Virus record (IMG/VR): IMGVR_UViG_3300002835_000007 | Span: 62,001-126,000 of that record | DNA length: 64,000 nt | Strand: one strand, 5' to 3' | In this document: positions 7,459-61,839 of the stretch, piece by piece | Layout of the letters: the number at the start of each line of letters is the position of its first letter | Position numbering within the stretch: the stretch's first letter is position 1 | Position numbers and translations under genes: made by a program | The notes under the pieces: generated by a model | Seen by the model: the letters and a program-made list of their open reading frames with translations, nothing else | What the model was told of the DNA's origin: nothing | Database searches by the model: none

Positions 7459-8898
7459 TTAGTTTAATTCAAATGGTTGGTTGCCAAAGGTCAATTCGAC
7501 ACCACCAATTCCATGTTTTAAATTCAGACCTAAAGATGATGAGTTTATGTTTCTTATAATTTCGGTTGCATCTTCTTGGCTAACGCCAGTGATTGCAATT
7601 GTATCATTTGTTGGGTTATTAATCGTTACTTTATCTCTAATTTGACTAGACATTAATGCTTTATATAAATTAGGCAATTTGAAATATAAGTTTGAGTTTG
7701 TATTTATTTTAATTTTTAATACTTGATTACGTCTAGCTTCTTCAGCTCTTTGTCTAGCTTCTTCCTCTTCTCTTTCTATACGTCTTGCTTCTTCTCGTTC
7801 AGCTCTTTTTCTAGCCTCTTCTTCATCAGCAATTCTTTTTTCCTCTTTAGATTCTTCAGCTCTAAGTTTGTCATAAATACCAGATTCACTATAATATTTG
7901 AATTTAACAAAGTTCTTTAATAAAGGGTTTGTTGCAATTTGTTCATCATAAGTTCTATTATATAGATTTTCCCTCATGGTACCTTCTCTTGCATCTATAT
8001 CACGTGGATTTCTTTCTGCATTTCTAACTAAGTTTTCAGCATAAGTTGGTTCTCTGAAAACTTTATCACGTAATTTTGTTAAAATTCCTTTTGCGATATC
8101 ATCTTCTAATGGATTTTCTACACCTAATGCTGCTATTTCTCGTTTTACTTTTTCAGTTAAATTTCTTAATTTAAAATTATCATCAAACATACTTAAAAAA
8201 ACAAATTCTGCTTTTGGACGCATACTTTGAAGTAAATCTCTTTTATCACTATATTGACTTTGTTCATCATTAGTCATTTCATATTCACCGTATATGATAT
8301 AATCTCTAAGTTTCTCGTAATAACTAGTTAATGTTTTTAAAATTCTTACATAGTCTTTAACTTCTCTTTCAGCTAATTTACGGTCTGTAATTAAACGGTT
8401 TAATCTGTTGAAAGCTTCTTTTCTATCTCTATCGTTATCATCAGTTATAGGTGATGAATATAACATAATAAGACGTTTACCATCATTATGTTTTTCATTA
8501 ATAAATTCATTTATTGCATCACGATTAGTTGCCATTATTCTTGCAGCTTGACCACCATTTAAAGTAGGGTACATAGTAATATTAGGTCCATTAATACTAA
8601 AACTAATTTCTAAAGCATAATCGTTTTCACCCATATATTCGATACCAACATCAGTTAATTTACCATCATGTTGAAAAGAATATCTTTCTTTAAGATATAT
8701 TTTTAAAAATACATTTAATAAACCATATTGTTCTGTTTTTATTTCATATTTAACAGTTCTATAATCATCGCCTTCATGTGCAATAGTATAAGGTGCTGCT
8801 TGACCGATTTCTGTCATTAACATTCTTTCAAAAATGAAATATTGCTCCAACCTCAAATTAGCTTCACGTATATTTTTCTTTTTATCAAATCTTCTCAT
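7459..8898 (-). CDS. paralog A1 of four-gene family (putative virion-internal protein)
   Basis: 479 aa; shared leader MRRFDKKKNIREANLRLEQ; charged coiled-coil insert. Confidence 0.75.
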   Translation of the reverse strand: MRRFDKKKNIREANLRLEQYFIFERMLMTEIGQAAPYTIAHEGDDYRTVKYEIKTEQYGLLNVFLKIYLKERYSFQHDGKLTDVGIEYMGENDYALEISFSINGPNITMYPTLNGGQAARIMATNRDAINEFINEKHNDGKRLIMLYSSPITDDNDRDRKEAFNRLNRLITDRKLAEREVKDYVRILKTLTSYYEKLRDYIIYGEYEMTNDEQSQYSDKRDLLQSMRPKAEFVFLSMFDDNFKLRNLTEKVKREIAALGVENPLEDDIAKGILTKLRDKVFREPTYAENLVRNAERNPRDIDAREGTMRENLYNRTYDEQIATNPLLKNFVKFKYYSESGIYDKLRAEESKEEKRIADEEEARKRAEREEARRIEREEEEARQRAEEARRNQVLKIKINTNSNLYFKLPNLYKALMSSQIRDKVTINNPTNDTIAITGVSQEDATEIIRNINSSSLGLNLKHGIGGVELTFGNQPFELN

Positions 8899-8917
8899 TG
8901 TTTTATATTAGTTTAAA

Positions 8918-9913
8918 TTAATTTATTTCTTCAATATTTTTTATTGTTTTATTATCATAATAAACAATAGCTTTATATGCCTTAAATAAATCATAACCAG
9001 TTTTCTCATTAAAATATTGAAAAAAGTTTTTAGCCTCAGTTGCTGTTACAGATTTTAATAGGTATTCCATATATTCAATACTACCTTGTTGTTTAGGCTC
9101 TAATTTACCTTTTTGTACAAAGAAACTATCTTTATCTTCATCGAACATTTTTATAAATGCATTGTAGAAATCTTCATCATCCAAATCCATTGAACCACGT
9201 TTTATCACGTGAATCATTAAATTTGCTTTTTTCTCATAATTTTTCATTTCATCAGATAACAAATCAACATTAAAGATACCAGAAAGACTACGTATTCTAA
9301 ATTTTTTAAAGTTATTCATTATTTTTGACCTTTTAATTTCAATATCATAATATAAATTATAAAGTTTTTCTCTTAAATCAGTTTCTTTTTTACCACCAGT
9401 TACTGGATATGAATAAACCACTACTAATCTTTTACCTTCTTGAATAGTTTTTTCTACCACTTCTAAAATTGCTGCTCTTACAGTTGCCATAATAGAAAAA
9501 ACTTTGTTAGTATTTAATTCTGGGAAAGAAACGTTACCACTTTCATCTTTAAAAACTCCAAATGAAATATAAACACCAAAGATATCATCTGGTAAATTTT
9601 CACCTTCAAAACCTAATTCTCTAATTAATGATTCAAAATCTGGGTCAAAACCAGAATACAAACTCTTTGCTTTAATACTAATAGATACAAACATGTTCCA
9701 CTCTGTTGATGGGTCTTCATCAGTTATCTCATTTTCATCTTTTGGTACTTTAAAACCAACTCTATGACCCATACTGCCCCAATCACTTACCACTTCATAT
9801 GGATACCCTTTTGAATCTGCGATTTCATTCAAGGTTATCATTTCAAATAAACGGTCTTGTTCCAATCTTAAATTGGCTTCATGTATAATTTTCTTTTTAT
9901 CAAATCTTCTCAT
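8918..9913 (-). CDS. paralog B1 of four-gene family
   Basis: 331 aa; shared leader; EIADSKGYPYE and FKVPKDENEIT shared with B2. Confidence 0.75.
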   Translation of the reverse strand: MRRFDKKKIIHEANLRLEQDRLFEMITLNEIADSKGYPYEVVSDWGSMGHRVGFKVPKDENEITDEDPSTEWNMFVSISIKAKSLYSGFDPDFESLIRELGFEGENLPDDIFGVYISFGVFKDESGNVSFPELNTNKVFSIMATVRAAILEVVEKTIQEGKRLVVVYSYPVTGGKKETDLREKLYNLYYDIEIKRSKIMNNFKKFRIRSLSGIFNVDLLSDEMKNYEKKANLMIHVIKRGSMDLDDEDFYNAFIKMFDEDKDSFFVQKGKLEPKQQGSIEYMEYLLKSVTATEAKNFFQYFNEKTGYDLFKAYKAIVYYDNKTIKNIEEIN

Positions 9914-9919
9914 ATTGTT

Positions 9920-10915
9920 TTAATTATTTAAATAAGGGTCATTTACATCAGAAATAATTTTATTACCATGTTTTATTTCAACTCCATTATTAACATCACT
10001 TTTAAGTTCTGCATTAAATTTTTCTCTAAATTTATTTAAAAATGTTTTAACACTTTCTTTTGATAACATTCTTATACTAGAATAGATGTATGTTCTACCA
10101 TTAACTTCAGAAAAGTTTACATTCAAATTTGGATAAGTATTGTTATCATTTAACACATCTAAATATTTCCAAAATTTATTATATAATTCTTCATCACCAT
10201 CTTTAAAAATTGTAACTTCAAAAGGTTTTGAATCCAATGTTTTAACATTAGCATGAACACTATCATTAGGTTTTAATAAATCAGCATTATAAATCCCACT
10301 ATACCCCCCATAATTGAATTTTTTGAATCGACTTAATATTTTTGACCTTTTAATTTCCATATCGAAATATGTATTATAAAGTTTTTCTCTTAAATAACCA
10401 TCTTTACCACCAGATAATGGATATGACCATATTATTAATAATTGTTTATTATCAGCAAGTTGTCTCAAAATAAATTCATTAATTGCTGCTTTTACAGTTC
10501 CCATAATAGACAAAACTCTTCTACCTTTTAATTCTGGGTAATGCGTAGTATCATATTCATCAATCACACCAAATGATACTTCAATACCAAATATGTTATT
10601 TGGTAAATTGTTAAACGTTTCAGTATCGTTATCGATTATTCTAAGTATAAAGTTTTCAAGACCTAATTTATTTCTACCATCAACACTTATATACATATTC
10701 CATTCTGTTGACGGGTCTATAGCAGTTATCTCATTTTCATCTTTTGGTACTTTAAAACTTACTTTATATCCATTAGAACCCCAATCTTTTAATATTTCAT
10801 ATGGATATCCTTTTGAATCTGCGATTTCATTTAAGTCTATCATTTCAAATAAACGGTTAGCTTCTAATCTCAAGTTAGCTTCAAATATATTTTTCTTTTT
10901 ATCAAATTTTCTCAT
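9920..10915 (-). CDS. paralog B2 of four-gene family
   Basis: 331 aa; same motifs as B1. Confidence 0.75.
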   Translation of the reverse strand: MRKFDKKKNIFEANLRLEANRLFEMIDLNEIADSKGYPYEILKDWGSNGYKVSFKVPKDENEITAIDPSTEWNMYISVDGRNKLGLENFILRIIDNDTETFNNLPNNIFGIEVSFGVIDEYDTTHYPELKGRRVLSIMGTVKAAINEFILRQLADNKQLLIIWSYPLSGGKDGYLREKLYNTYFDMEIKRSKILSRFKKFNYGGYSGIYNADLLKPNDSVHANVKTLDSKPFEVTIFKDGDEELYNKFWKYLDVLNDNNTYPNLNVNFSEVNGRTYIYSSIRMLSKESVKTFLNKFREKFNAELKSDVNNGVEIKHGNKIISDVNDPYLNN

Positions 10916-10924
10916 TGTTTTATT

Positions 10925-12364
10925 TTAATTATTTGGAACGTCAAATGGTTGACCCCCATAAGTTATTTCTACATGGTCTTGACCATTATTAAAGTCAGAG
11001 TTTAAAGCTGCTCTTATTTCTCTAACTATGCTTTCAGCAACATTTCTATCAATATCTTTTATCTCTATAGAATTACCAATAGTACTTAAAAGATGGTTTA
11101 AAGATGGACGATTCCTCTTTAAACTATTTAAAACACTAATTAATCTACTGTTATCTGAATTTAAATCATATAAACTAGATTGTTCACCTATTTTAATTAT
11201 TAACTTTTGAGCGTTTAATGCATTTGTTATATCGGCATCAATTTCTGCATTAGTCTTTACTGGTTTGTCTTCACCAACAGCTTTAAGATAATCATAGATA
11301 CCTATCTCACCACCTTTCTTGAATTTCACAAAGTTTTTTAATAATGAGTTTGACGCAATTTGTTCATCAAAATATTTATTGTATAAACGTTCTCTCATAG
11401 AACTTTCATCTGCTGGTAAAGCTGTTGATGATACTGGAGCGTTAGCAACTAAATTTTGAATATAATCTACATCGGTTGAATCTATTTTATCACGTAAAAA
11501 ACGTAATACTGAAAAATAAGTTTTAATGTTAATAATATCTTCATTGTCACCCTCTTGAGTTTGTGTTGCAGCTTCTCTTTTTGCTTGTTTTAGTAAATTA
11601 TCTAAATTATATTGTTTATCATATAAACATAACAAGATTCCTTTTTTTGAACCAGCAATATTAAGATTATTAATAAAAGTCTGAGTATTATTCTCATATT
11701 TTTCACTTTCATCACCAGTCATTTTAGGACGATATTCACCGTCAATTAATATTGCTCTAAAAATAATTTCATAATAATAATCCAATAATTTTTGAATTTT
11801 AACATAATTTCTAACCTCTCTTTCAGAAACTGGTCTATTATTCGAAACATAACCTTTTAAAGTGTCTATAGCCCTTTCTCTAGCCTTATCATTATTATCT
11901 TCAACTGGAGATGAAAATACCATAATTAGACGATAACCTTTAGCTGCCATCTCATCAATATATTCACTAGTAGCTTTAGTGTTTGTCGCCATGATTTGTG
12001 CTGCTTGAGAGTTTATTGTACCGTAAGTACTAATATTACTCTTTTCAGTTGTTTTAACACCAAAACTAATACCAATACAATAATCTTTTTCATCCATTTC
12101 TTCAATACCAACACGGTCAAATCTATATTCTAGTCTGTTAAAATCACTTTTAAAATATTTAGAAATAGTTAATTCCATAGTTACTAAACCATATTGTTCT
12201 GTTTTTATTTCATATCTAACGTTTCTATAACCGTCATCTTCATATGAAATAGTATAAGGTGCTGCTTCACCAATTTCTGTCATTAACATTCTTTCAAAAA
12301 CAAATTCTTGCTCTAATCTCAAATTGGCTTCACGTATAATCTTCTTTTTGTCAAATCTTCTCAT
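10925..12364 (-). CDS. paralog A2 of four-gene family
   Basis: 479 aa; FERMLMTEIG.AAPYTI and YEIKTEQYGL shared with A1. Confidence 0.75.
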   Translation of the reverse strand: MRRFDKKKIIREANLRLEQEFVFERMLMTEIGEAAPYTISYEDDGYRNVRYEIKTEQYGLVTMELTISKYFKSDFNRLEYRFDRVGIEEMDEKDYCIGISFGVKTTEKSNISTYGTINSQAAQIMATNTKATSEYIDEMAAKGYRLIMVFSSPVEDNNDKARERAIDTLKGYVSNNRPVSEREVRNYVKIQKLLDYYYEIIFRAILIDGEYRPKMTGDESEKYENNTQTFINNLNIAGSKKGILLCLYDKQYNLDNLLKQAKREAATQTQEGDNEDIINIKTYFSVLRFLRDKIDSTDVDYIQNLVANAPVSSTALPADESSMRERLYNKYFDEQIASNSLLKNFVKFKKGGEIGIYDYLKAVGEDKPVKTNAEIDADITNALNAQKLIIKIGEQSSLYDLNSDNSRLISVLNSLKRNRPSLNHLLSTIGNSIEIKDIDRNVAESIVREIRAALNSDFNNGQDHVEITYGGQPFDVPNN

Positions 12365-14699: not shown

Positions 14700-15077
14700 A
14701 TGTATAGACAAGAAACAATACTATATAAAGATACATACAATATACACATAACAAAAGACTATGTAGATAATATCCTTATAGAAGAAATTCACTATAATAG
14801 AAACAATAGAATAATATATAAGAACAATATTGAATGTGAAGTAAAATATTTCTATGATGTAAATGTAAAATATGAACTACAGTTATCTAAAAATATTAAA
14901 CAAGAAAATATCTTACGTAAAATAACACAAGATACAAAAAACTTTGGTAGTGAAAAACATTATATAATAAATGATAACACTTGTACATATTTCTGTACAA
15001 TGAATAATCATGACGCAATAAAATACATAAAAGAATATATAAAAACATATATACTAAAATCTAACAATCTTATATGA
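14700..15077 (+). CDS. hypothetical protein
   Basis: ORF in G-poor DNA. Confidence 0.5.
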   Translation: MYRQETILYKDTYNIHITKDYVDNILIEEIHYNRNNRIIYKNNIECEVKYFYDVNVKYELQLSKNIKQENILRKITQDTKNFGSEKHYIINDNTCTYFCTMNNHDAIKYIKEYIKTYILKSNNLI

Positions 15078-15304: not shown

Positions 15305-15454
15305 CTATACTATGTCACATGTATACATACATAACAATTTTTATATGACAATACTAATATCATCATATAACTTATACGATAATTTAATAGTAATATAACA
15401 CCAGTGTACCACATACCCATATACTGTGGGGAACGTAGTTCCCATCAAGTACAA

Positions 15455-15480
15455 CTTGTACAGATTTCTGTACAAGGTAT
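15455..15480. repeat. TGTACA-N6-TGTACA palindromic motif (copies also at 14981, 31216 reversed, 39273, 41114)
   Basis: CTTGTACAGATTTCTGTACAAG; 15458-15480 is the exact reverse complement of 31216-31238. Confidence 0.75.
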
Positions 15481-15732
15481 GGATATGACGTACTTATTTG
15501 TACCTACATTAGCACGCAAATATTATGTGGCGATTTTGAGCCAAAAAACGGGTTTTTGTGGTAAAAAGTGGTAAATAGTGTAAGTAAATGGTACAAAGAA
15601 TTAGTAAATGGCGTTTTTTACCTAAAAATAGGGTATGGACATAGATTTTCCATAGGGGAAAATAAGTTAAAGAAACCTTTATGCCCTTTAAAAACACGCA
15701 ACCACTTTTTCAGCCGAAATTTACGGACACAA

Positions 15733-15748
15733 TGTTTCACGTGGAACA
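15733..15748. promoter_or_regulatory. parS: parS-like centromere site
   Basis: TGTTTCACGTGGAACA; reverse complement TGTTCCACGTGAAACA fits the bacterial consensus TGTTNCACGTGAAACA; intergenic. Confidence 0.75.
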
Positions 15749-16019
15749 TTACCACAAAAACGTGCATAGTAAGTCAGCCCAGCCCAGTAAAAATATTGGC
15801 ACAAGTTATTGCCCCTACTTAAAAAAGTAAGGGTATAAATTTATGCACCAAATCTCGTGGAAAGGGTGTGCAAATATAATATGTCAAATTTCACTTTGTC
15901 ATAAGCGTTAAAATTAATATTTAAATTTCAGTATACAAATGTAAGCATAATATTTTAATCTACCAAACTTTTTTGCAATTTATAATCATTCTAAATAAGG
16001 GTTGTTAAAAAAAGTTTAG

Positions 16020-16082
16020 GGTAGGTTGGAGTCTACTCTTCTGAAACTTGTTAAGTCAGCACGTATCTCTTTCAAACCTACA
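16020..16082 (-). ncRNA. dispersed sRNA-like element copy 1
   Basis: AGAGUAGACUCC core, CUGA...UCAG hairpin, promoter TTAG-N20-TACATTTG on minus strand. Confidence 0.6.
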
Positions 16083-16294
16083 ATACAAATGTAGGTATAA
16101 TAAATTTAATATCCTAATAAAAAAAATTTTTTTATTAATTATTTTTTTATTATATTACACACGCACATATGTACACGTGTACATTTATAGAATAGTGGTA
16201 TTAAAATTTTTTTTAATTATTTTTTATAAAGTAGTAGGATATTAAAAAAGTTTATATATCTTTGTAGGGTATTAATCAATTAAAACAATTACAT

Positions 16295-17011
16295 ATGAGT
16301 TTGGTATTTAAACACAAAGACACTATTCAAGTTGTTACGTTAGCAACAACAAAGAATGACAAAATTGAATCTAATAAGAAACGTAAGATAGTACAAACGT
16401 ACACGTTTTCTTATAAGCAATTTGAGTTAGTTAAGAAACGTTTTGAAACGAATGAAGCAATTGGCATGAAAAACTTTTTTAGTAACGCAGATAGCAATTG
16501 TTTGGATTGTCCTTTCAATTCTTATGGCAAATGTTATACACATAAATTTAATCAATACGTTGGTTTTATTTCATCTTTAAAAAGTGTATTTAGAAAGTTT
16601 GGTAGTATAGACAATATACCTAACTTTGATATTTCAATGTTAGACAAAGTTACCAAAATGAGCAAAGGTACTTATGTACGTTTCGGAACGTATGGTGAAC
16701 CAAGTTTGCACCCAATTGAATTAATTCGTTCTATGGTAAAAGTATGCGACAATTGGACGGGTTATACGCACCAATGGAATAAAACTAATTTAGGTGATTA
16801 TTTTATGGCAAGTACGCATACAACAAGTGAGCAACAAAGTGCTGAAATTTTAGGTTATAGGTCGTTTGTAGCAACTGAAAATAAGTTAGGGTATGTTGGT
16901 TGCCCAGCGAGTAAAGAAATGGGTTATAAGTCGAGTTGTAGTGCTTGTAATTTATGTAGTGGAAAGTTAGGAACTAAAACAAATAAAAGTATAGAAATTA
17001 TCCTACATTAA
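16295..17011 (+). CDS. Cys-rich conserved phage protein (possible Fe-S/metal-binding, Gp88-like)
   Basis: CLDCP...CY, RFGTYGEP, TGYTHQW, CPAS...CSACNLC. Confidence 0.6.
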   Translation: MSLVFKHKDTIQVVTLATTKNDKIESNKKRKIVQTYTFSYKQFELVKKRFETNEAIGMKNFFSNADSNCLDCPFNSYGKCYTHKFNQYVGFISSLKSVFRKFGSIDNIPNFDISMLDKVTKMSKGTYVRFGTYGEPSLHPIELIRSMVKVCDNWTGYTHQWNKTNLGDYFMASTHTTSEQQSAEILGYRSFVATENKLGYVGCPASKEMGYKSSCSACNLCSGKLGTKTNKSIEIILH

Positions 17012-17742: not shown

Positions 17743-18627
17743 ATGAACACACAAGAAAAAGTACAAGAAATTTTAAAGTCTAATGGATTAGATTTTACAA
17801 TTGAAAAAGCACCTATGATGGCTTTAAATTCTAATGGTATCTATGTACCAAGTGAGTATTTCGGTTTGATTAATTCAAGCACGAATGAAGTGATTAACAC
17901 CGTAAAAGAGGGTTATACGGTATCTCAAAACGAAGAGGTTGTTGAGTTGGTTATGCGTGGAATTGAACCTTTCGGAAACGATATTCAAGTTACCAAAGGT
18001 GGTGCGTTGAATGGTGGACGCAAAGTGTTTTTACAACTTGCTATCAATGGTGACGGCAAAGTTAATGGTGACACTATTAAGAAGTATATTACTATCGTGG
18101 ATAGTAATGACGGCAGTACGGGTCTATCGGTAGGTATTGGTGATTTAACTATGAGTTGCAGTAACCAATTTTTTAAGTTCTACAAAAGTGGACAATCTAA
18201 ATTTCGTCATACGGCAAGTTTGGAACGTAGAATCAAAGAAATTCCTTTCCTTATTGAAACGGCTTTATCTGAATCATTAAGACAAATTGAAATCTACAAT
18301 CAATTTGCAAGTACGCAAGTTTCACGTGATTTGGCACACAAAATGGTTAAACACTTATTAGGGTTTGACAAAGTGTATACAAGTGTAAAAGACTTGTCAG
18401 ATAAGTCTACACGTAGTATAAACAAAATGGATGCTTTATACAACGCTATTGAACGTGAAATGAATAGCAAAGGTGACACGTTGTGGGGTTTACATAGTGG
18501 AATTACATATTACACTACACACGAATTGTCAGCACCAAAACGTGACAATGGTAAAGTTGAAACTTTGTTACAAGGAACGGGTTACAATATGAACCAAGCA
18601 AGTTTGGAATTTGCTTTAAATTACTAA
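17743..18627 (+). CDS. DUF932 (DUF945/LGT_TIGR03299-like) domain protein
   Basis: LDFTIEK.P, Y.V.QNEE, L.GGRKVF, S.DGS, C.NQ, RHT. Confidence 0.75.
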   Translation: MNTQEKVQEILKSNGLDFTIEKAPMMALNSNGIYVPSEYFGLINSSTNEVINTVKEGYTVSQNEEVVELVMRGIEPFGNDIQVTKGGALNGGRKVFLQLAINGDGKVNGDTIKKYITIVDSNDGSTGLSVGIGDLTMSCSNQFFKFYKSGQSKFRHTASLERRIKEIPFLIETALSESLRQIEIYNQFASTQVSRDLAHKMVKHLLGFDKVYTSVKDLSDKSTRSINKMDALYNAIEREMNSKGDTLWGLHSGITYYTTHELSAPKRDNGKVETLLQGTGYNMNQASLEFALNY

Positions 18628-18738: not shown

Positions 18739-18800
18739 GGTAGGTTGGAGTCTACTCTTTCAAGATTTCCCTCGACCCGTTTCGGTTATCACCACCAACA
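18739..18800 (-). ncRNA. dispersed sRNA-like element copy 3
   Basis: UCGAGG-GAAA-UCUUGA hairpin + core; promoter TTTG-N20-TACCTTTG. Confidence 0.65.
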
Positions 18801-18932: not shown

Positions 18933-19472
18933 ATGAAAAATTTAAATGACGTAAGATTAATGGCAGAAACATTAATGACAAAACAATTCACGTTTAACAC
19001 GTACCATGGGGTTTATACATTGAGTGGTGAACAATTAGGTTATACGTTTAAGTTTGATAGTGCAAAACGTAGATTTGGTTGCTGTAGTTATGGTAAAAAA
19101 ACTATTGGTTTATCTATGCCACTATGTAATGAAAATTTAGATAAAATAGACACAAAGATTACTGACACTATGTTGCACGAATTGGCACACGCATTTTGTG
19201 TTCACGTGTATGGTGTAAGGGACGGAAGAGGTCATGGGTACAATTGGCAACATATTGCAAAACAAATTGGTTGTGACGCTAAAAGATGTTTTAGTAGTGA
19301 TAGTGTTAATTTACCTAAATCAAAATATACTTTGTTATGTGAGAGTTGTGGTAAAGAAACACCAAAACACAAAGTGATTAGAAAGACTTATGCTTGTGCT
19401 AAATGTTGTGATGAACATAACAACGGAAAATTCAGTTATGATTATCAATTAAAATTAGTTACGAATTATTAA
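18933..19472 (+). CDS. SprT-like zinc metalloprotease
   Basis: RFGCC, HELAH, GHG..W, C-terminal CxxC...CxxC. Confidence 0.85.
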   Translation: MKNLNDVRLMAETLMTKQFTFNTYHGVYTLSGEQLGYTFKFDSAKRRFGCCSYGKKTIGLSMPLCNENLDKIDTKITDTMLHELAHAFCVHVYGVRDGRGHGYNWQHIAKQIGCDAKRCFSSDSVNLPKSKYTLLCESCGKETPKHKVIRKTYACAKCCDEHNNGKFSYDYQLKLVTNY

Positions 19473-23292: not shown

Positions 23293-23343
23293 AGGCACGT
23301 TGGAGTCTACTCTTCCATTCCCACGGCACGTCTAACTTGACAA
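23293..23343 (-). ncRNA. dispersed sRNA-like element copy 4
   Basis: CCGU-GGGA-AUGG + core; promoter CTTG-N20-AATCTTTG. Confidence 0.6.
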
Positions 23344-24200: not shown

Positions 24201-25040
24201 ATGCCAAACTGGATTACAAACAACGTAAGAATCATTGCTGATGAAACTTTATTAGCAAAGATTAGAGAAGAAGTAAAAGGAACACCATATAGTAATGGTG
24301 AAGACAAAGAATTTGATTTTAATCAAATTGCACCAATACCAACTGAATTGGTAGGTACAACAAGTCCTTGTCGCATTATTACACAAGAGGAATACGATAT
24401 ACAAGAGGAACGTATTACCAAAGGTGAATTAACGGAAAGTGAAGTACGTTTTGGAGTATCGAGAGGTATTACAAAAGAAATGCACGATGATTTTATTGAA
24501 CGATTTGGTTATGCTGATTGGTATGGGTGGCAAATTAGTAATTGGGGTACAAAGTGGAACGCAAGTGATGTGTATTGGAGTGATGATAATGAGAGTGTAA
24601 GTTTTAATACTGCGTGGAGTACACCTTTCAACTTATTTTTAAAACTATCTGAAAAATATCCCGAAGCACGTATTGAAGTTGAATATGCTGATGAAGACTT
24701 TGGTTACAATGTAGGAACTTATACTTTGGTAGGTGGAGTTGAAATTGAAGAAAATGTACCCGAAGGTGGCACACGTGAAGCATACGAAATGGCTCTTAAT
24801 ATTCAAGGTGGTGAAGACTATTATTTAGGTGATGATTTTTGTGATGTAGATGAAGACGAGGAATTATCAAAGTTTACAAATTCAATGATTGAAATTGCAT
24901 ACGATAGAGATTATATGCCAACCGAGGATTGTGGCTATGCAAGGAATGTGTTGGAACGATTTAAAGAGATTGCGTTGGCAAATGAAAACTTTGAGTTGGT
25001 TGCAACAATACAAAAGGAATTAGAAAAAGTAGAAAAATAA
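24201..25040 (+). CDS. DUF1281/YubB ferredoxin-like domain protein
   Basis: MPNW, FDFN.I.P.P, WY.W...NWGTKWN, F.TAWS.P. Confidence 0.75.
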   Translation: MPNWITNNVRIIADETLLAKIREEVKGTPYSNGEDKEFDFNQIAPIPTELVGTTSPCRIITQEEYDIQEERITKGELTESEVRFGVSRGITKEMHDDFIERFGYADWYGWQISNWGTKWNASDVYWSDDNESVSFNTAWSTPFNLFLKLSEKYPEARIEVEYADEDFGYNVGTYTLVGGVEIEENVPEGGTREAYEMALNIQGGEDYYLGDDFCDVDEDEELSKFTNSMIEIAYDRDYMPTEDCGYARNVLERFKEIALANENFELVATIQKELEKVEK

Positions 25041-31635: not shown

Positions 31636-31711
31636 GGGACAAAAGTAATCATTATTTTTCACATAACAAAATAATTTTGTTATTTATATTCATTCTAAAT
31701 AATTTCATAAC

Positions 31712-41456: not shown

Positions 41457-41658
41457 AACAAAAAAGTATTAAAAAATAAATAAAAAAAGAACTAACGCCC
41501 AACCGAAGTACATATCATATCCTCAATTGAACAATACAAAGATAGGGATAAATTTTAAATAACCAAAACTTTTTTCACTTTTTTTTTTCAAAGTTATTAA
41601 CACTAAATTGTTAATAACTTTTTTTAAAAAAAAACTTGCATATTAAAAAAATAAAACC

Positions 41659-41709
41659 CAGGTTGGAGTCTACTCTTCCATTCCCACGGCACGTACCTTA
41701 ATTGTACAC
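41659..41709 (-). ncRNA. dispersed sRNA-like element copy 13
   Basis: CCGU-GGGA-AUGG + core; promoter CTTG-N20-TATATTTG. Confidence 0.6.
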
Positions 41710-59325: not shown

Positions 59326-61839
59326 TTATTTTGTTTTTTTAGTCTTTGCTTGCTTTATGACCAATTCTTCTTTCTTCTCATCGAATGAAACTTCTATGGT
59401 TTCACCCTCTTTGAAATTTTCATTTAGAATCTCATCGGCTACTGTGTCCTCAACATAATGTTGGATTGCTCTAGCTAATGGTCTAGCACCATATGCTTCG
59501 TCATAACCTTGTCTTCCTAAGAATTCAATAGCTTCTTTGGTCACATTTAATTTATAACCCATTTCGATTACACGTTCTTCAAGTTTTTTGATTTCCAAGT
59601 AAATAATTTTATGGATATCTTCTTGTGATAAACTTTTGAATACGATAGCTTCATCAATACGATTTAAAAACTCTGGTTTGAATTTTTTCTTTAATGCTTT
59701 TTCAATAATTGAACGAGCTCTATTTTCTTCACCAACAATTGATGCTGCTGTTTCAAACCCCATTGTTTGACCAAATGTTGCAACTTCTTTAACACCAATG
59801 TTTGATGTCATAATAATAAGAGAGTTTTTAAAGTTAATTTTTCTACCTAAACCATCTGTTAGATGTCCTTCATCTAATAATTGAAGTAAAATATTGAAAA
59901 CATCTTCATGTGCTTTTTCAATCTCGTCAAATAAAATAACACAATGTGGTTTACGTCTAACTTTTTCAGTTAACTGACCACCTTGGTCATAACCAACGTA
60001 ACCTGGAGGTGGACCTACTAATCTAGATACCGAATGTTTCTCCATGTATTCTGACATGTCAATTCTAATTAAAGATTCTGCGTCACCATAAACTTGCTCT
60101 GCTAAAAATTTAGCTAACAACGTTTTACCGACACCAGTAGGACCTAAGAAGATAAATGAACCAACTGGTTTGTTTTTATCTTTAATTCCAATTCTATTTC
60201 TTTTGATTGCTTTAATAACTTTAGTTACTGCTTCATCTTGACCAATAACTTTACCCATTAACTCTTTATCTAAGTTCATTAATCTTTTACTTTCTTGTGT
60301 AGATATTTTTGTTAACGGAATACCAGTCATCATTGAAACCACCTCAGAAATAATTTCAACACCAACTTCAGTAACTTTTTTATCTAAAGTTGATTGCCAT
60401 TCAGCCATTACTTTTTCTAACTCTTCAGTGATTTTTTTCTCATCATCACGAAGTTTAGCTGCTTCTTCATATTTTTGTTTTTTTACAACATCTTTTTTCT
60501 TTTCGTTGATTTCTTTAATTTTTGATTCTAATTCTTTAATGTTTTCTGGTTTTTCAACACCAACATTAGTTGTTGCACCAGCTTCATCCAATACATCAAT
60601 AGCTTTATCTGGCATAGACCTATCCATGATATATCTAGCAGATAATTTAACACATTCTTCAATTGCTTCGTCAGTGTATTTTACTTTATGATGATTTTCA
60701 TATTTTTCTTTGATATTGTTTAAGATAACTTTTGTTTCTTCCAATGTTGGTTCTTCAACAAGTACTTGTTGGAAACGTCTAGTCAACGCACCATCTTTCT
60801 CAATGTTTTCTCTGTATTCATCTAATGTTGTTGCACCAATTACTTGCAGCTCACCACGTGCTAAAGCTGGTTTAAAGATGTTTGAAGCATCTAGTGAACC
60901 AGAAGCATTACCAGCACCTACAATTGTATGTAACTCATCTATAAACAAGACAACATCTGGATTTGCTTTACATTCTTCTAGAACAGCTTTCATTCTTTCT
61001 TCAAACTGTCCACGATATTTTGTACCAGCAACAATTGACGCTAAGTCTAAACTATAAATTTTCTTGTTGATTAATGTTCTAGGTGCGTTACCGTCTTTAA
61101 TAAGTTGAGCAAGTCCTTCAACAATAGATGTTTTACCAACACCAGGCTCACCTATCAAAACTGGATTATTCTTTTTTCTTCTAGATAAAATTTGAGATAC
61201 TCTTTTGATTTCTTTTTCACGACCAACAACTGGGTCAATTTCACCTTTTTCAACAGCTTTAGATACATCTCTACAGAAATTATCTAACACTGGAGTTTTA
61301 CTTTTGTTTTCAACAATTTTACTTTTCTTTCTAAAACTTTCAGTTTCGTCATTATCATCATCAATTGAACTGTTAGTAAACTTATCACCAGATGGTGAAT
61401 CTAACTTAACAATTCGTCTAAAATCGTAATAGTTTAACCCAATTTTGCTTAAAAATTCAGAAATATTATTTTTATTGTTCAACATAACTAATAGTATATG
61501 TTGCGTGTCAATCATGTTATGATTTAACTCTTCACATTGTTTTTCTAATTCTTTGATTAACGTTTTTGTTTCATCTGAAAATGGTAACGTTTTTCTAGTG
61601 CTAGTATAACCTCTAGGTGTTAAATCATTTTTTCTAATAAAATCAGAAAACTTATCATATAAATCTATAACATCAAGTTTAAAATGGTCTTTTAACATTT
61701 TTGTACACGTGTTATCATTGTCTGCTAATATAGATAAAAGGATATGTTCTGGTCTTACTTTAACATCTTCAAAAGCTTTAGCTTCTCCAGCTGATTTGCT
61801 CATAATCTGTTTTACTTTTGGGTAAACTTCTCTATTCAT
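59326..61839 (-). CDS. clpC: ATP-dependent Clp protease ATP-binding subunit (ClpC-like)
   Basis: Clp-N repeats, GEPGVGKT, UVR-like YEEAAKLRD, GPTGVGKT, GYVGY, MGF loop, GARPL. Confidence 0.92.
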   Translation of the reverse strand: MNREVYPKVKQIMSKSAGEAKAFEDVKVRPEHILLSILADNDNTCTKMLKDHFKLDVIDLYDKFSDFIRKNDLTPRGYTSTRKTLPFSDETKTLIKELEKQCEELNHNMIDTQHILLVMLNNKNNISEFLSKIGLNYYDFRRIVKLDSPSGDKFTNSSIDDDNDETESFRKKSKIVENKSKTPVLDNFCRDVSKAVEKGEIDPVVGREKEIKRVSQILSRRKKNNPVLIGEPGVGKTSIVEGLAQLIKDGNAPRTLINKKIYSLDLASIVAGTKYRGQFEERMKAVLEECKANPDVVLFIDELHTIVGAGNASGSLDASNIFKPALARGELQVIGATTLDEYRENIEKDGALTRRFQQVLVEEPTLEETKVILNNIKEKYENHHKVKYTDEAIEECVKLSARYIMDRSMPDKAIDVLDEAGATTNVGVEKPENIKELESKIKEINEKKKDVVKKQKYEEAAKLRDDEKKITEELEKVMAEWQSTLDKKVTEVGVEIISEVVSMMTGIPLTKISTQESKRLMNLDKELMGKVIGQDEAVTKVIKAIKRNRIGIKDKNKPVGSFIFLGPTGVGKTLLAKFLAEQVYGDAESLIRIDMSEYMEKHSVSRLVGPPPGYVGYDQGGQLTEKVRRKPHCVILFDEIEKAHEDVFNILLQLLDEGHLTDGLGRKINFKNSLIIMTSNIGVKEVATFGQTMGFETAASIVGEENRARSIIEKALKKKFKPEFLNRIDEAIVFKSLSQEDIHKIIYLEIKKLEERVIEMGYKLNVTKEAIEFLGRQGYDEAYGARPLARAIQHYVEDTVADEILNENFKEGETIEVSFDEKKEELVIKQAKTKKTK

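What the first reader, a model, noticed from the sequence alone, without database searches (positions are those of the whole stretch)
15731..15750. Chromosomal-type parS site at the left edge of the early region
Seen: AATGTTTCACGTGGAACATT, a 20 bp near-palindrome in a ~1 kb gene-free gap. Its 16 bp core fits the bacterial parS consensus. No parA or parB gene is in this window. Inference: the phage may load host ParB (and SMC) on incoming DNA to position or protect it, or may titrate ParB from the host origin.
Basis: partly seen in the sequence, partly recalled or inferred. Interest (0 to 1): 0.65.

Follow-up and report, generated by a model that had tools for sequence, protein, structure and literature searches.

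The report
Host ParB and MraZ sites in phage
A large freshwater phage of Bacteroidota carries, in a conserved 1-kb non-coding stretch ahead of its early genes, perfect copies of two host chromosomal protein-binding sites (the ParB centromere parS and the MraZ cell-division operator) while encoding neither protein in the 206 kb available, so it seems to plug into its host's cell-cycle machinery.

Summary
AATGTTTCACGTGGAACATT lies at 15731-15750 in a 990-bp gene-free gap. Its 16-bp core is an exact chromosomal parS, the only one in the 206-kb phage record (3.6e-4 expected).

The site is under selection. It is the longest invariant run in an otherwise about 60%-identical non-coding alignment of relatives. 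One lineage has three copies.

The likely host is Bacteroidota, perhaps Pedobacter-like. Those genomes use this same parS variant and encode canonical ParB. The phage record holds no ParB, ParA or MraZ gene, but it is only about 58% complete.

The main new result lies 152 bp to the left. There the same conserved module holds a canonical MraZ operator: three GTG(G/T) boxes with 6-nt spacers. It matches the operator upstream of mraZ in Pedobacter at all 23 specified positions of a 24-nt pattern. The same operator type sits in large intergenic gaps of about 40 distinct IMG/VR phage loci. It is paired with parS in at least three lineages.

Best reading: this is a docking module for two host cell-cycle DNA-binding proteins at the head of the early region. 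Whether it senses host state, positions phage DNA or titrates the proteins is untested. I rate it a new variant of a known kind, host-factor site co-option, and of high interest.

The parts
15305..16294 (.). 990-bp non-coding gap between a 76-aa ORF and the first early gene. It holds the whole module.
   Evidence: ORF list. Gap ORFs have no Pfam match and no Rfam match. The gap is syntenic and partly conserved in L010, L243, L244, L247 and L249.
15733..15748 (.). parS. TGTTCCACGTGAAACA on the minus strand, an exact match to the consensus. The extended 20-bp near-palindrome spans 15731-15750.
   Evidence: The 17-nt run ATGTTTCACGTGGAACA (15732-15748) is the longest invariant run among 4 lineages in a 588-column alignment in which 47% of columns are invariant. 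The same variant occurs in Flavobacterium and Pedobacter chromosomal parS clusters.
15558..15581 (+). MraZ-type operator: GTGG-TAAAAA-GTGG-TAAATA-GTGT. Three GTG(G/T) boxes with 6-nt spacers.
   Evidence: It is the only such array in 206 kb, against 0.03 expected. It is 96% identical over 28 nt to sites about 50 bp upstream of mraZ in Bacteroidota genomes. It matches exactly the 24-nt pattern (one free position) found in two Pedobacter genomes. The box rule is stated in PMC12957436. In L010 the boxes are kept while a spacer changes.
15497..15557 (+). Conserved block just left of the operator (TTTGTACC.A.ATTAGCA ... TATTAT ... GC.AAAAAACGGG). It may be a rightward sigma-70-like promoter, TTGTAC-N17-TATTAT.
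   Evidence: Conserved in L010, L244 and the distant L407. The promoter reading is my inference from the sequence only.
15714..15726 (.). Small palindrome CCGAAATTTACGG, 7 bp left of parS.
   Evidence: Pairing is kept by changes on both sides in relatives (columns 221-237).
15812..15833 (.). Conserved hairpin CCCCTACTT-AAAAA-AGTAAGGG between parS and the leftward promoter.
   Evidence: The stem is kept with one compensatory change (columns 116-137).
15936..15967 (-). Leftward Bacteroidota-type promoter TTTGGTAG-N16-TACATTTG. It points at parS (about 190 nt downstream) and at the MraZ operator (about 350 nt downstream).
   Evidence: The motif occurs 8 times in the window against 0.12 expected. 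The -33 and -7 elements are kept while the spacer diverges in L244, L249, L010 and L247, and the promoter is duplicated in L010/L247.
15978..15995 (.). 17-18-bp near-palindrome ATTTATAATCATTCTAAA abutting the -33 element of the leftward promoter. The 14-nt TCATTCTAAATAAG is invariant among relatives.
   Evidence: A 22/23 match lies upstream of a multihaem cytochrome c operon in five related Bacteroidota genomes. Its function is unknown.
15455..15476 (-). Hairpin CTTGTACAGAAATCTGTACAAG at the left end of the module. It is a possible terminator of the leftward transcript.
   Evidence: Terminator-like scan. A G/C swap on both arms is seen in L010. A second copy lies at 14980-15000.
16021..16039 (+). 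Repeated intergenic 19-mer GTAGGTTGGAGTCTACTCT at the right end of the module.
   Evidence: 4 copies in the window against 0.01 expected. Also found in L010, L245, L248, L251 and L407.
16295..17011 (+). First gene to the right: a 238-aa DUF7227/GP88-like phage protein. It served as the anchor for finding relatives. In L010/L247 two more parS sites follow its stop codon.
   Evidence: phrog_2554. Atlas DUF7227. Relatives. Extra parS sites.

Best explanation
The site is a genuine, selectively maintained chromosomal-type parS. It is most likely bound by the host's own ParB. The host is a freshwater Bacteroidota bacterium, probably Pedobacter-like (Sphingobacteriaceae).

parS does not stand alone. 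It belongs to a conserved module of about 500 bp at the head of the early gene cluster. The module also carries a canonical operator for the host division regulator MraZ. Both sites lie inside the transcribed region of a conserved leftward host-type promoter.

Proposed working:
1. After injection, host ParB-CTP dimers load at parS and slide over the neighbouring kilobases.
2. A host MraZ oligomer sits on the three GTG(G/T) boxes.
3. Together they tie the activity and organisation of the early region to the host's division and segregation state. This is a sensing or 'lytic deferment'-type control.
4. As phage DNA multiplies, the sites also soak up both proteins.

Shown here: both sites are exact host-type sites, unique in the genome, conserved and recurrent in phages. 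The host phylum has the cognate proteins. The sequenced 206 kb of phage does not encode them.

Inferred: binding in vivo, the identity of the host, and every downstream consequence.
For: parS:
- Exact and unique in the record, with 3.6e-4 expected per genome.
- Invariant in five diverged relatives whose flanks are about 60% identical.
- Expanded to three copies in L010/L247.
- Retained at a shifted position in the distant 368-kb relative L407.
- Tree: the module lies on both sub-branches of a well-supported clade.

Host:
- The nearest bacterial relatives of the phage's ClpC/ClpB-like gene are nearly all Bacteroidota.
- Promoters are of the Bacteroidota type.
- 131 of 201 sampled Bacteroidota genomes have an exact parS, with a reversed-pattern control near zero.
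- 5 of 5 tested genomes have clustered sites and one canonical ParB.

MraZ operator:
- Unique in the record.
- Matches exactly the 24-nt pattern (one free position) found in Pedobacter, where it lies upstream of mraZ.
- Fits the published box rule (PMC12957436).

The phage record has no ParB, ParA or MraZ gene.

Recurrence in other phages:
- 50 IMG/VR loci, 40 of them distinct, carry the operator. None is next to an mraZ gene. 45 of 50 sit in intergenic gaps, mostly large ones.
- parS lies within 100-420 bp of the operator in L389, L405 and L407 as well.

Precedent for the logic: clusters of host CtrA sites in a large intergenic region of lytic phages (PMC9437464).
Against: - There are no binding or expression data. 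RNA-library contigs did not cover the module, although contigs cannot show absence.
- The record is only about 58% complete. A phage-encoded ParB or MraZ-like protein could lie in the missing roughly 150 kb. The one-pattern scan for host-like ParB on viral contigs is insensitive.
- ParB is not a classical transcription factor. Neither site overlaps a recognisable promoter core.
- The operator's orientation relative to flanking ORFs is not consistent across phages.
- Close relatives that lost the module (L245, L248/L251) show it is dispensable in some genomic contexts.
Confidence: 0.6

Rival explanations
1. This is the first reader's reading: a pure centromere. parS recruits host ParB, and with it ParA and possibly SMC. 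These position, compact or segregate phage DNA, for example to keep a jumbo-phage episome in dividing cells during a carrier or pseudolysogenic state. The MraZ operator would be an unrelated neighbour.
For: - Exact, conserved parS, and more copies in one lineage. Site multiplication is what raises ParB loading on chromosomes.
- Host genomes have ParB.
- Pedobacter-like genomes have SMC.
- Host parS sites occur in tight clusters, like the L010 pair.
Against: - The repeated pairing with an MraZ operator in three or more lineages is not explained by a centromere role.
- I did not search for lysogeny or plasmid-maintenance genes, so none can be cited.
- No ParA exists in the 206 kb.
- Most phages with the operator have no parS in the fetched locus.
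Confidence: 0.25
2. Decoy or sponge. The sites have no role in cis. As the phage genome amplifies, hundreds of copies titrate ParB from the host origin and MraZ from the dcw promoter. This deranges chromosome segregation and division to the phage's benefit.
For: - Both sites are copies of single-locus host sites. The operator occurs once per host genome and parS a few times. Modest phage copy numbers would therefore outcompete them.
- Both proteins act in the cell cycle.
- No cognate phage genes were found.
Against: - The fixed place at the head of the early region, inside a conserved promoter-bearing module, is not needed for a sponge.
- Only one to three sites occur per genome.
- From published work recalled here, loss of MraZ or ParB is mild in several bacteria.
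Confidence: 0.15
3. The module is a phage replication origin of the T4 type: a promoter plus a downstream region that forms a priming R-loop. parS would sit next to it as on bacterial chromosomes, and the GTG-box array would act as iterons.
For: - A conserved leftward promoter is followed by about 470 nt of conserved non-coding sequence ending in a hairpin.
- The capsid is T4-like.
- Box spacing is 10 bp.
Against: - No DnaA boxes lie in the gap.
- GC skew only tracks gene orientation.
- The boxes match the host MraZ operator rather than being phage-specific.
- No replication data exist.
Confidence: 0.1
4. The sites are bound by phage-encoded proteins: a ParB and an MraZ/AbrB-like protein encoded in the unsequenced about 40% of the genome. 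The phage would then have its own partition or regulatory system that happens to share host specificity.
For: - The record is 58% complete by CheckV.
- The L010 contig extends about 120 kb beyond the record's left end and could not be searched.
- ParB-fold proteins are common in phages (PMC12704722).
Against: - Mobile elements with their own ParB normally use a distinct parS (general knowledge).
- Both sites here are letter-perfect host sites.
- There was no hit in 206 kb for five ParB/ParA models or for MraZ.
- No host-like ParB was found on the L010 contig in the pattern scan, though that test is weak.
Confidence: 0.1
5. Chance palindrome, or a passively carried scrap of host DNA with no function.
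For: Exact parS 16-mers are expected by chance roughly a hundred times across all of IMG/VR. This is my estimate; for the scan.
Against: - Invariance amid diverged flanks, multiplication and recurrence with the MraZ operator.
- Similarity to host DNA stops at the 24-28-nt sites themselves.
- The two host sites lie on different host contigs.
Confidence: 0.02

Closest known systems
Chromosomal ParABS centromere (parS TGTTNCACGTGAAACA, Spo0J/ParB; Livny et al. 2007 as cited in PMC10197239)
   Same: The 16-bp sequence is identical, and it is the same variant as in Flavobacterium and Pedobacter chromosomes. It can occur in close pairs or triplets, as in L010.
   Different: It lies on a lytic-type jumbo phage, not near oriC. 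There is no parA or parB nearby or anywhere in the 206 kb. It is a single site in this phage.
Partition cassettes of plasmid-prophages (P1/P7 parABS, N15 sopABC)
   Same: A phage genome carrying a centromere-like site.
   Different: Those elements encode their own ParA and ParB and use their own distinct sites. Here the site is the host's and no Par genes are found.
MraZ operator of the dcw (division and cell wall) promoter (PMC12957436; bioRxiv 10.1101/2022.02.09.479790)
   Same: Three GTG(G/T) boxes with 6-nt spacers. The sequence matches exactly the 24-nt pattern (one free position) found at the native operator about 50 bp upstream of mraZ in Pedobacter.
   Different: No mraZ or dcw genes follow it. 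It lies in a phage intergenic region 152 bp from a parS, and about 700 bp from the next gene on its strand.
Clusters of host CtrA-binding sites in lytic Alphaproteobacteria phages, 'lytic deferment' (PMC9437464)
   Same: A large intergenic region of a lytic phage is loaded with binding sites for a host cell-cycle regulator. The pattern is recurrent in unrelated phages. The proposed purpose is to read the host cell-cycle state.
   Different: Different phylum and proteins: MraZ and ParB rather than CtrA. There are one operator and one to three parS sites rather than many sites. ParB is a sliding clamp, not a classical transcription factor. No binding or reporter data exist here.
ParB-family silencing of nearby promoters (P. 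aeruginosa ParB at parS3/parS4, PMC5521831; KorB and P1 ParB from general knowledge)
   Same: ParB loaded at a site can repress neighbouring promoters. This would let parS act as a regulatory element beside early promoters.
   Different: This has not been shown for Bacteroidota ParB or for any phage target. It is inference only.

Membership tests
Chromosomal-type parS (ParB loading site) | 16-bp palindromic match to TGTTNCACGTGAAACA | tested here: met
   Exact match on the minus strand at 15733-15748.
Chromosomal-type parS (ParB loading site) | Maintained by selection, meaning conserved in relatives beyond the background level | tested here: met
   It is the longest invariant run (17 nt) in the non-coding alignment. 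It is present in L010, L242-L244, L247 and L249, and at a shifted position in L407.
Chromosomal-type parS (ParB loading site) | A cognate canonical ParB is available in the cell | tested here: inconclusive
   5 of 5 tested Bacteroidota genomes have one TIGR00180 ParB, and 131 of 201 have an exact parS. However, the actual host is only inferred.
Chromosomal-type parS (ParB loading site) | Bound by ParB, which then spreads in a CTP-dependent way | not testable with these tools
   This needs EMSA or ChIP-seq.
Self-contained parABS partition cassette (plasmid or prophage type) | parA and parB genes on the same element, usually adjacent to parS | tested here: not met
   No ParB_N, HTH_ParB, TIGR00180, AAA_31 or CbiA match in 206 kb. 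About 40% of the genome is unseen.
MraZ operator | [quoted passage not shown] | tested here: met
   GTGG-TAAAAA-GTGG-TAAATA-GTGT at 15558-15581. It occurs once in 206 kb against 0.03 expected. The rule is quoted from PMC12957436.
MraZ operator | Sequence match to native operators of the host lineage | tested here: met
   96% identity over 28 nt in several Bacteroidota genomes. An exact match to the 24-nt pattern (one free position) in two Pedobacter genomes. These sites lie about 50 bp upstream of mraZ-rsmH.
MraZ operator | Sits at the promoter of mraZ and the dcw cluster | tested here: not met
   No MraZ gene in the phage record. The flanking genes are small phage ORFs.
MraZ operator | Bound by an MraZ oligomer | not testable with these tools
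   This needs EMSA or ChIP.
Host-regulator site clusters in lytic phages (CtrA type) | Host-factor sites concentrated in a large intergenic region, recurrent across phage lineages | tested here: met
   A 990-bp gap holds both sites. 45 of 50 IMG/VR operator loci lie in intergenic gaps, mostly 400-1500 bp. The operator is paired with parS in L389, L405 and L407.
Host-regulator site clusters in lytic phages (CtrA type) | Sites overlap promoters and change phage transcription | tested here: inconclusive
   Both sites lie downstream of a conserved leftward promoter. They do not lie on a recognisable promoter core, and their orientation relative to ORFs is not consistent. No expression data exist.

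The most novel reading that the evidence does not exclude
Many phages of Bacteroidota, jumbo phages included, carry host MraZ operators in the large non-coding control regions ahead of their early genes. Several lineages pair the operator with the host centromere parS. This would make it a general and so far undescribed way for lytic phages to read, or to disarm, the host's division and chromosome-segregation machinery, using host ParB as a phage-recruited factor.
Probability: 0.4. Interest if true: 0.85.

Novelty: new variant of a known kind. Interest (0 to 1): 0.75.

Why it matters
Phages are known to borrow host regulators such as LexA, CtrA and PhoB by carrying their binding sites. I found no report, in the paper library searched, of a lytic-type phage carrying the host's chromosomal centromere, or of any phage carrying MraZ boxes.

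If host ParB and MraZ do bind here, three things follow:
- It links phage early development to bacterial division and segregation in a major environmental phylum.
- It offers a natural system for asking what ParB clamps do on foreign DNA.
- It gives a sequence signature, the exact operator and parS variants, for assigning uncultured phages to hosts.

The phage recurs in at least 18 freshwater or lake metagenome runs from 2016 to 2024. It is therefore ecologically real and not an assembly oddity.

Tried and rejected
1. Phage-encoded partner proteins. Searches with five ParB/ParA models and with MraZ over the 206 kb were all blank.
2. ParB on the relative's larger contig. A scan of IMG/VR with a profile of five Bacteroidota ParBs returned 28 contigs, none from this phage clade. 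It rests on two peptide patterns and is insensitive.
3. An ncRNA or a decayed gene in the gap. Rfam gave nothing, gap ORFs had no Pfam match, and no ORF is conserved in L010 or L244. RNAalifold supports only two small hairpins.
4. oriC mimic. No DnaA boxes lie in the gap, and GC skew is uninformative.
5. A captured host fragment. BLAST of the module against 401 Bacteroidota genomes matches only the 24-28-nt sites themselves.
6. Phage databases. INPHARED has no DNA match to the gap.
7. Is an orphan parS common in viral contigs? 119 sampled IMG/VR loci with exact parS show no ParB within about 6 kb by my own HMM. Only one has a 3-box MraZ array. By my estimate about 100 chance hits are expected collection-wide, and many of these contigs may be host fragments, so I draw no conclusion from this set.
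8. A consistent orientation or distance of the operator to flanking ORFs or promoters in other phages. None was found.
9. Transcription evidence. Contigs from two RNA libraries do not cover the module, which proves nothing.
10. The 17-bp palindrome at 15978-15995 as a Fur box. The resemblance is from memory only. The host matches reduce to one orthologous cytochrome locus plus weak hits. I leave it as an observation.

Full report
**1. The observation**

Window 15731-15750 reads AATGTTTCACGTGGAACATT. The 16-bp core at 15733-15748 matches TGTTNCACGTGAAACA exactly on the minus strand. This consensus is the one cited for chromosomal parS in PMC10197239.

The window is bases 62001-126000 of an IMG/VR virus record of 205,931 bp, which CheckV rates 58% complete. 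The site is the only one in that record with at most 1 mismatch. Base composition predicts 3.6e-4 exact sites per genome.

The site lies in a 990-bp gap (15305-16294). ORFs within the gap have no Pfam match and are not conserved in relatives, and Rfam finds nothing.

**2. What the genome is**

It is a real tailed phage. It has a portal, a T4-like major head protein, a DNA polymerase and a tail fibre. The capsid's nearest relatives are Flavobacterium phages and huge metagenomic phages. GC content is 30%.

Host-type promoters of the Bacteroidota kind (TTTGG...N...TAnnTTTG) are strongly over-represented: 8 of the strict form against 0.12 expected. They are densest immediately to the right of the site, at genome positions 75-104 kb. 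'Left edge of the early region' is therefore fair.

The nearest bacterial relatives of the phage's ClpC/ClpB-like gene are nearly all Bacteroidota, at 52-54% identity.

The phage DNA is found in at least 18 freshwater or lake metagenome runs from 2016 to 2024.

**3. Is parS selected?**

I anchored on the 238-aa DUF7227-like gene to the right and fetched 26 viral and 80 metagenomic relatives.

- An exact parS lies in the syntenic upstream gap in L242 (100% protein identity), L243 (97%), L244 (87%), L010 and L247 (72%), and L249 (70%).
- L010 and L247 carry two further exact sites, 24 bp apart, right after the gene's stop codon.
- In a 588-column alignment of four lineages only 47% of columns are invariant, and pairwise identity is about 60%. 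The longest invariant run is the 17-nt ATGTTTCACGTGGAACA.
- Strain variants in two further metagenomes differ at many nearby positions. None of the differences listed falls inside parS, though 94 further differences were not shown.
- On a tree of the anchor protein, all module-bearing rows fall in one well-supported 12-row clade. They lie on both of its sub-branches, with two losses.

The relatives without the site have a different upstream context.

**4. Would a host protein bind it?**

- Five named Bacteroidota genomes (Flavobacterium, Pedobacter, Maribacter, a Crocinitomicaceae MAG and Ekhidna) all have tight clusters of such sites. The reversed-pattern control is near zero.
- 131 of 201 sampled genomes of the phylum have an exact site.
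- The variant TGTTTCACGTGGAACA is the one found in the Flavobacterium and Pedobacter clusters.
- All five genomes have exactly one canonical ParB.

The phage record has no ParB_N, HTH_ParB, TIGR00180, AAA_31 or CbiA match.

One caveat remains. About 40% of the genome is unseen. The relative's 247-kb contig should cover the missing part, but it is not held for whole-record search.

**5. The turn: a second host site**

I ran BLAST of the conserved part of the gap (15480-15935) against 401 Bacteroidota genomes. Only two classes of hit recurred. One was parS. The other was a 28-nt stretch at 15553-15580, at 96% identity.

In the bacterial genomes that stretch lies about 50 bp upstream of mraZ (Pfam MraZ, E = 1.6e-29), which is followed by rsmH. 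The phage sequence reads GTGG-TAAAAA-GTGG-TAAATA-GTGT. [quoted passage not shown]

- The array occurs once in the 206 kb, against 0.03 expected.
- It is kept in L010, L242, L243 and L244. In L010 a spacer changes while the boxes do not.
- The 24-nt pattern (one free position) is matched exactly in Pedobacter fastidiosus and in a Pedobacter MAG. Two Flavobacteriaceae MAGs match with 1-2 mismatches.
- The phage has no MraZ gene in the 206 kb.
- The operator lies 152 bp to the left of parS. The start-to-start spacing is 175-208 bp among relatives, so the two sites are not phased.

**6. Anatomy of the module, left to right**

- Hairpin at 15455-15476
- Conserved block at 15497-15557
- MraZ operator at 15558-15581
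- Small palindrome at 15714-15726
- parS at 15733-15748
- Hairpin at 15812-15833
- Leftward promoter at 15967 to 15936. Its -33 and -7 elements are conserved while the spacer diverges, and it is duplicated in L010/L247.
- Invariant near-palindrome at 15978-15995
- Repeated 19-mer at 16021-16039
- The first early gene

Both host-type sites therefore lie inside the region transcribed from the leftward promoter, roughly +190 and +350 from its start. No DnaA boxes are present.

**7. Generality**

An IMG/VR scan for GTGGTAAAAAGTGG-N6-GTGK found 50 loci, 40 of them distinct by their flanks. Many lie on contigs of 100-380 kb. My rough chance expectation is a handful. That figure is an estimate, because the size of the collection is not given.

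- None of the loci has an mraZ gene beside the operator.
- 45 of 50 lie in intergenic gaps, mostly 400-1500 bp long.
- Three loci outside the close clade also have parS near the operator.
  - L405 (149-kb contig) has an exact site 307 bp from a four-box operator. Its downstream genes are 34-50% identical to this phage's early genes.
  - L407 (368-kb contig) has a module homologous to this one at both ends, but parS has moved next to the leftward promoters.
  - L389 (81-kb contig) has no shared genes and the opposite site order.
- By my estimate a parS with at most 1 mismatch is expected in under 0.1% of 10-kb loci. The pairing is therefore not chance.
- The converse does not hold. Among 119 sampled viral loci with parS, only one has a 3-box array.

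**8. Interpretation**

What is shown: two exact host-type binding sites are unique in the phage genome, conserved, and recurrently associated in phage control regions. The cognate proteins exist in the host phylum and are not encoded in the sequenced phage DNA.

What is inferred: host ParB-CTP loads at parS and spreads, and host MraZ binds the boxes.

The consequence I consider most likely is coupling of the early region to the host's cell-cycle state. The closest precedent is the cluster of host CtrA sites in a large intergenic region of lytic Alphaproteobacteria phages, termed 'lytic deferment' (PMC9437464). ParB loaded at parS can repress neighbouring promoters in Pseudomonas (PMC5521831, listed; I read only the title and abstract).

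The rivals remain open:
- a pure centromere role, possibly with SMC. SMC hinge proteins exist in Pedobacter-like genomes, but known condensins were not found in the two Bacteroidetes strains studied in PMC10197239;
- a titration decoy;
- a T4-style R-loop origin;
- phage-encoded partner proteins in the unsequenced part.

Chance is effectively excluded.

**9. Novelty**

Searches of the paper library found parS/ParB only as an engineered tag for phage DNA, or as part of self-contained partition systems. They found nothing on MraZ boxes in phages. I classify the finding as a new variant of a known kind: phages co-opting host DNA-binding proteins through cis sites.

**10. Limits**

- The host is inferred, not known.
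- There are no binding, expression or replication data.
- The genome is incomplete.

Noticed in passing
window 16021-16039, 18740-18758, 23295-23313, 41658-41676: The 19-mer GTAGGTTGGAGTCTACTCT is repeated in intergenic spots of the early region: 4 copies against 0.01 expected. It is embedded in a repeat unit of about 80-140 bp. It also occurs three times in L010, upstream of the DUF7227 gene in L245/L248/L251, and in the distant L407. Its function is unknown; it could be a small RNA, a terminator or a regulatory cassette.
   Followed up: partly
window 15978-15995 and 31682-31699: A 17-18-bp near-palindrome, ATTTATA(A/T)TCATTCTAAA. The first copy abuts the -33 element of the leftward promoter, and it includes a 14-nt run that is invariant among relatives. 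A 22/23 match lies upstream of a multihaem cytochrome c operon in five related Bacteroidota genomes. It may be a third host-factor site. It looks Fur-box-like, but that is from memory only.
   Followed up: partly
window 14980-15000 and 15456-15476: Palindromes of the form TGTACA-N-TGTACA, for example TTGTACAGATTTCTGTACAA. L010 keeps the pairing through a G/C swap on both arms. They could be a terminator or a site for a dimeric protein.
   Followed up: partly
window 7459-12364 (minus strand): Four tandem paralogous genes of 479, 331, 331 and 479 aa. They are 40-45% identical in pairs and share the N-terminus MRRFDKKK.I.EANLRLE. They have no Pfam or PHROG match.
   Followed up: partly
window 17743-18627, 18933-19472, 24201-25040: Early-region genes typical of the leading regions of conjugative plasmids: DUF932, SprT-like metalloprotease, and an Api92-like DUF1281_C domain. 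A homologue of the DUF932 gene also follows the MraZ-parS module in L405.
   Followed up: no
window 59326-61839 (minus strand): A full-length ClpC/ClpB-type double AAA+ chaperone of 837 aa, with Clp_N and UVR motifs, encoded by the phage. Its best bacterial relatives are Bacteroidota, at 52-54% identity.
   Followed up: partly
whole record G000; window 15936-41600: 38 promoter-like sites of the form TTTGG-N18-22-TAnnTTTG, nearly all on the plus strand, clustered at genome positions 2-10, 58-67 and 75-104 kb. Two -7 flavours occur, TACATTTG and TATCTTTG, which may mark different promoter classes.
   Followed up: partly
window 15397-15420: A 24-nt stretch matches (22-23 of 24) the coding region of the same host cytochrome c gene whose upstream region matches 15976-15998. 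The two matches have the same order and orientation, about 820 bp apart in hosts against about 580 bp in the phage. This may be a trace of an old capture of host DNA, or a coincidence.
   Followed up: partly
IMG/VR loci L373, L384, L389, L405 and others: Several unrelated phage contigs have four to five GTG(G/T) boxes in register, for example GTGG-N6-GTGG-N6-GTGG-N6-TGGG. That is longer than the three-box arrays seen upstream of mraZ in the Bacteroidota genomes examined here.
   Followed up: no
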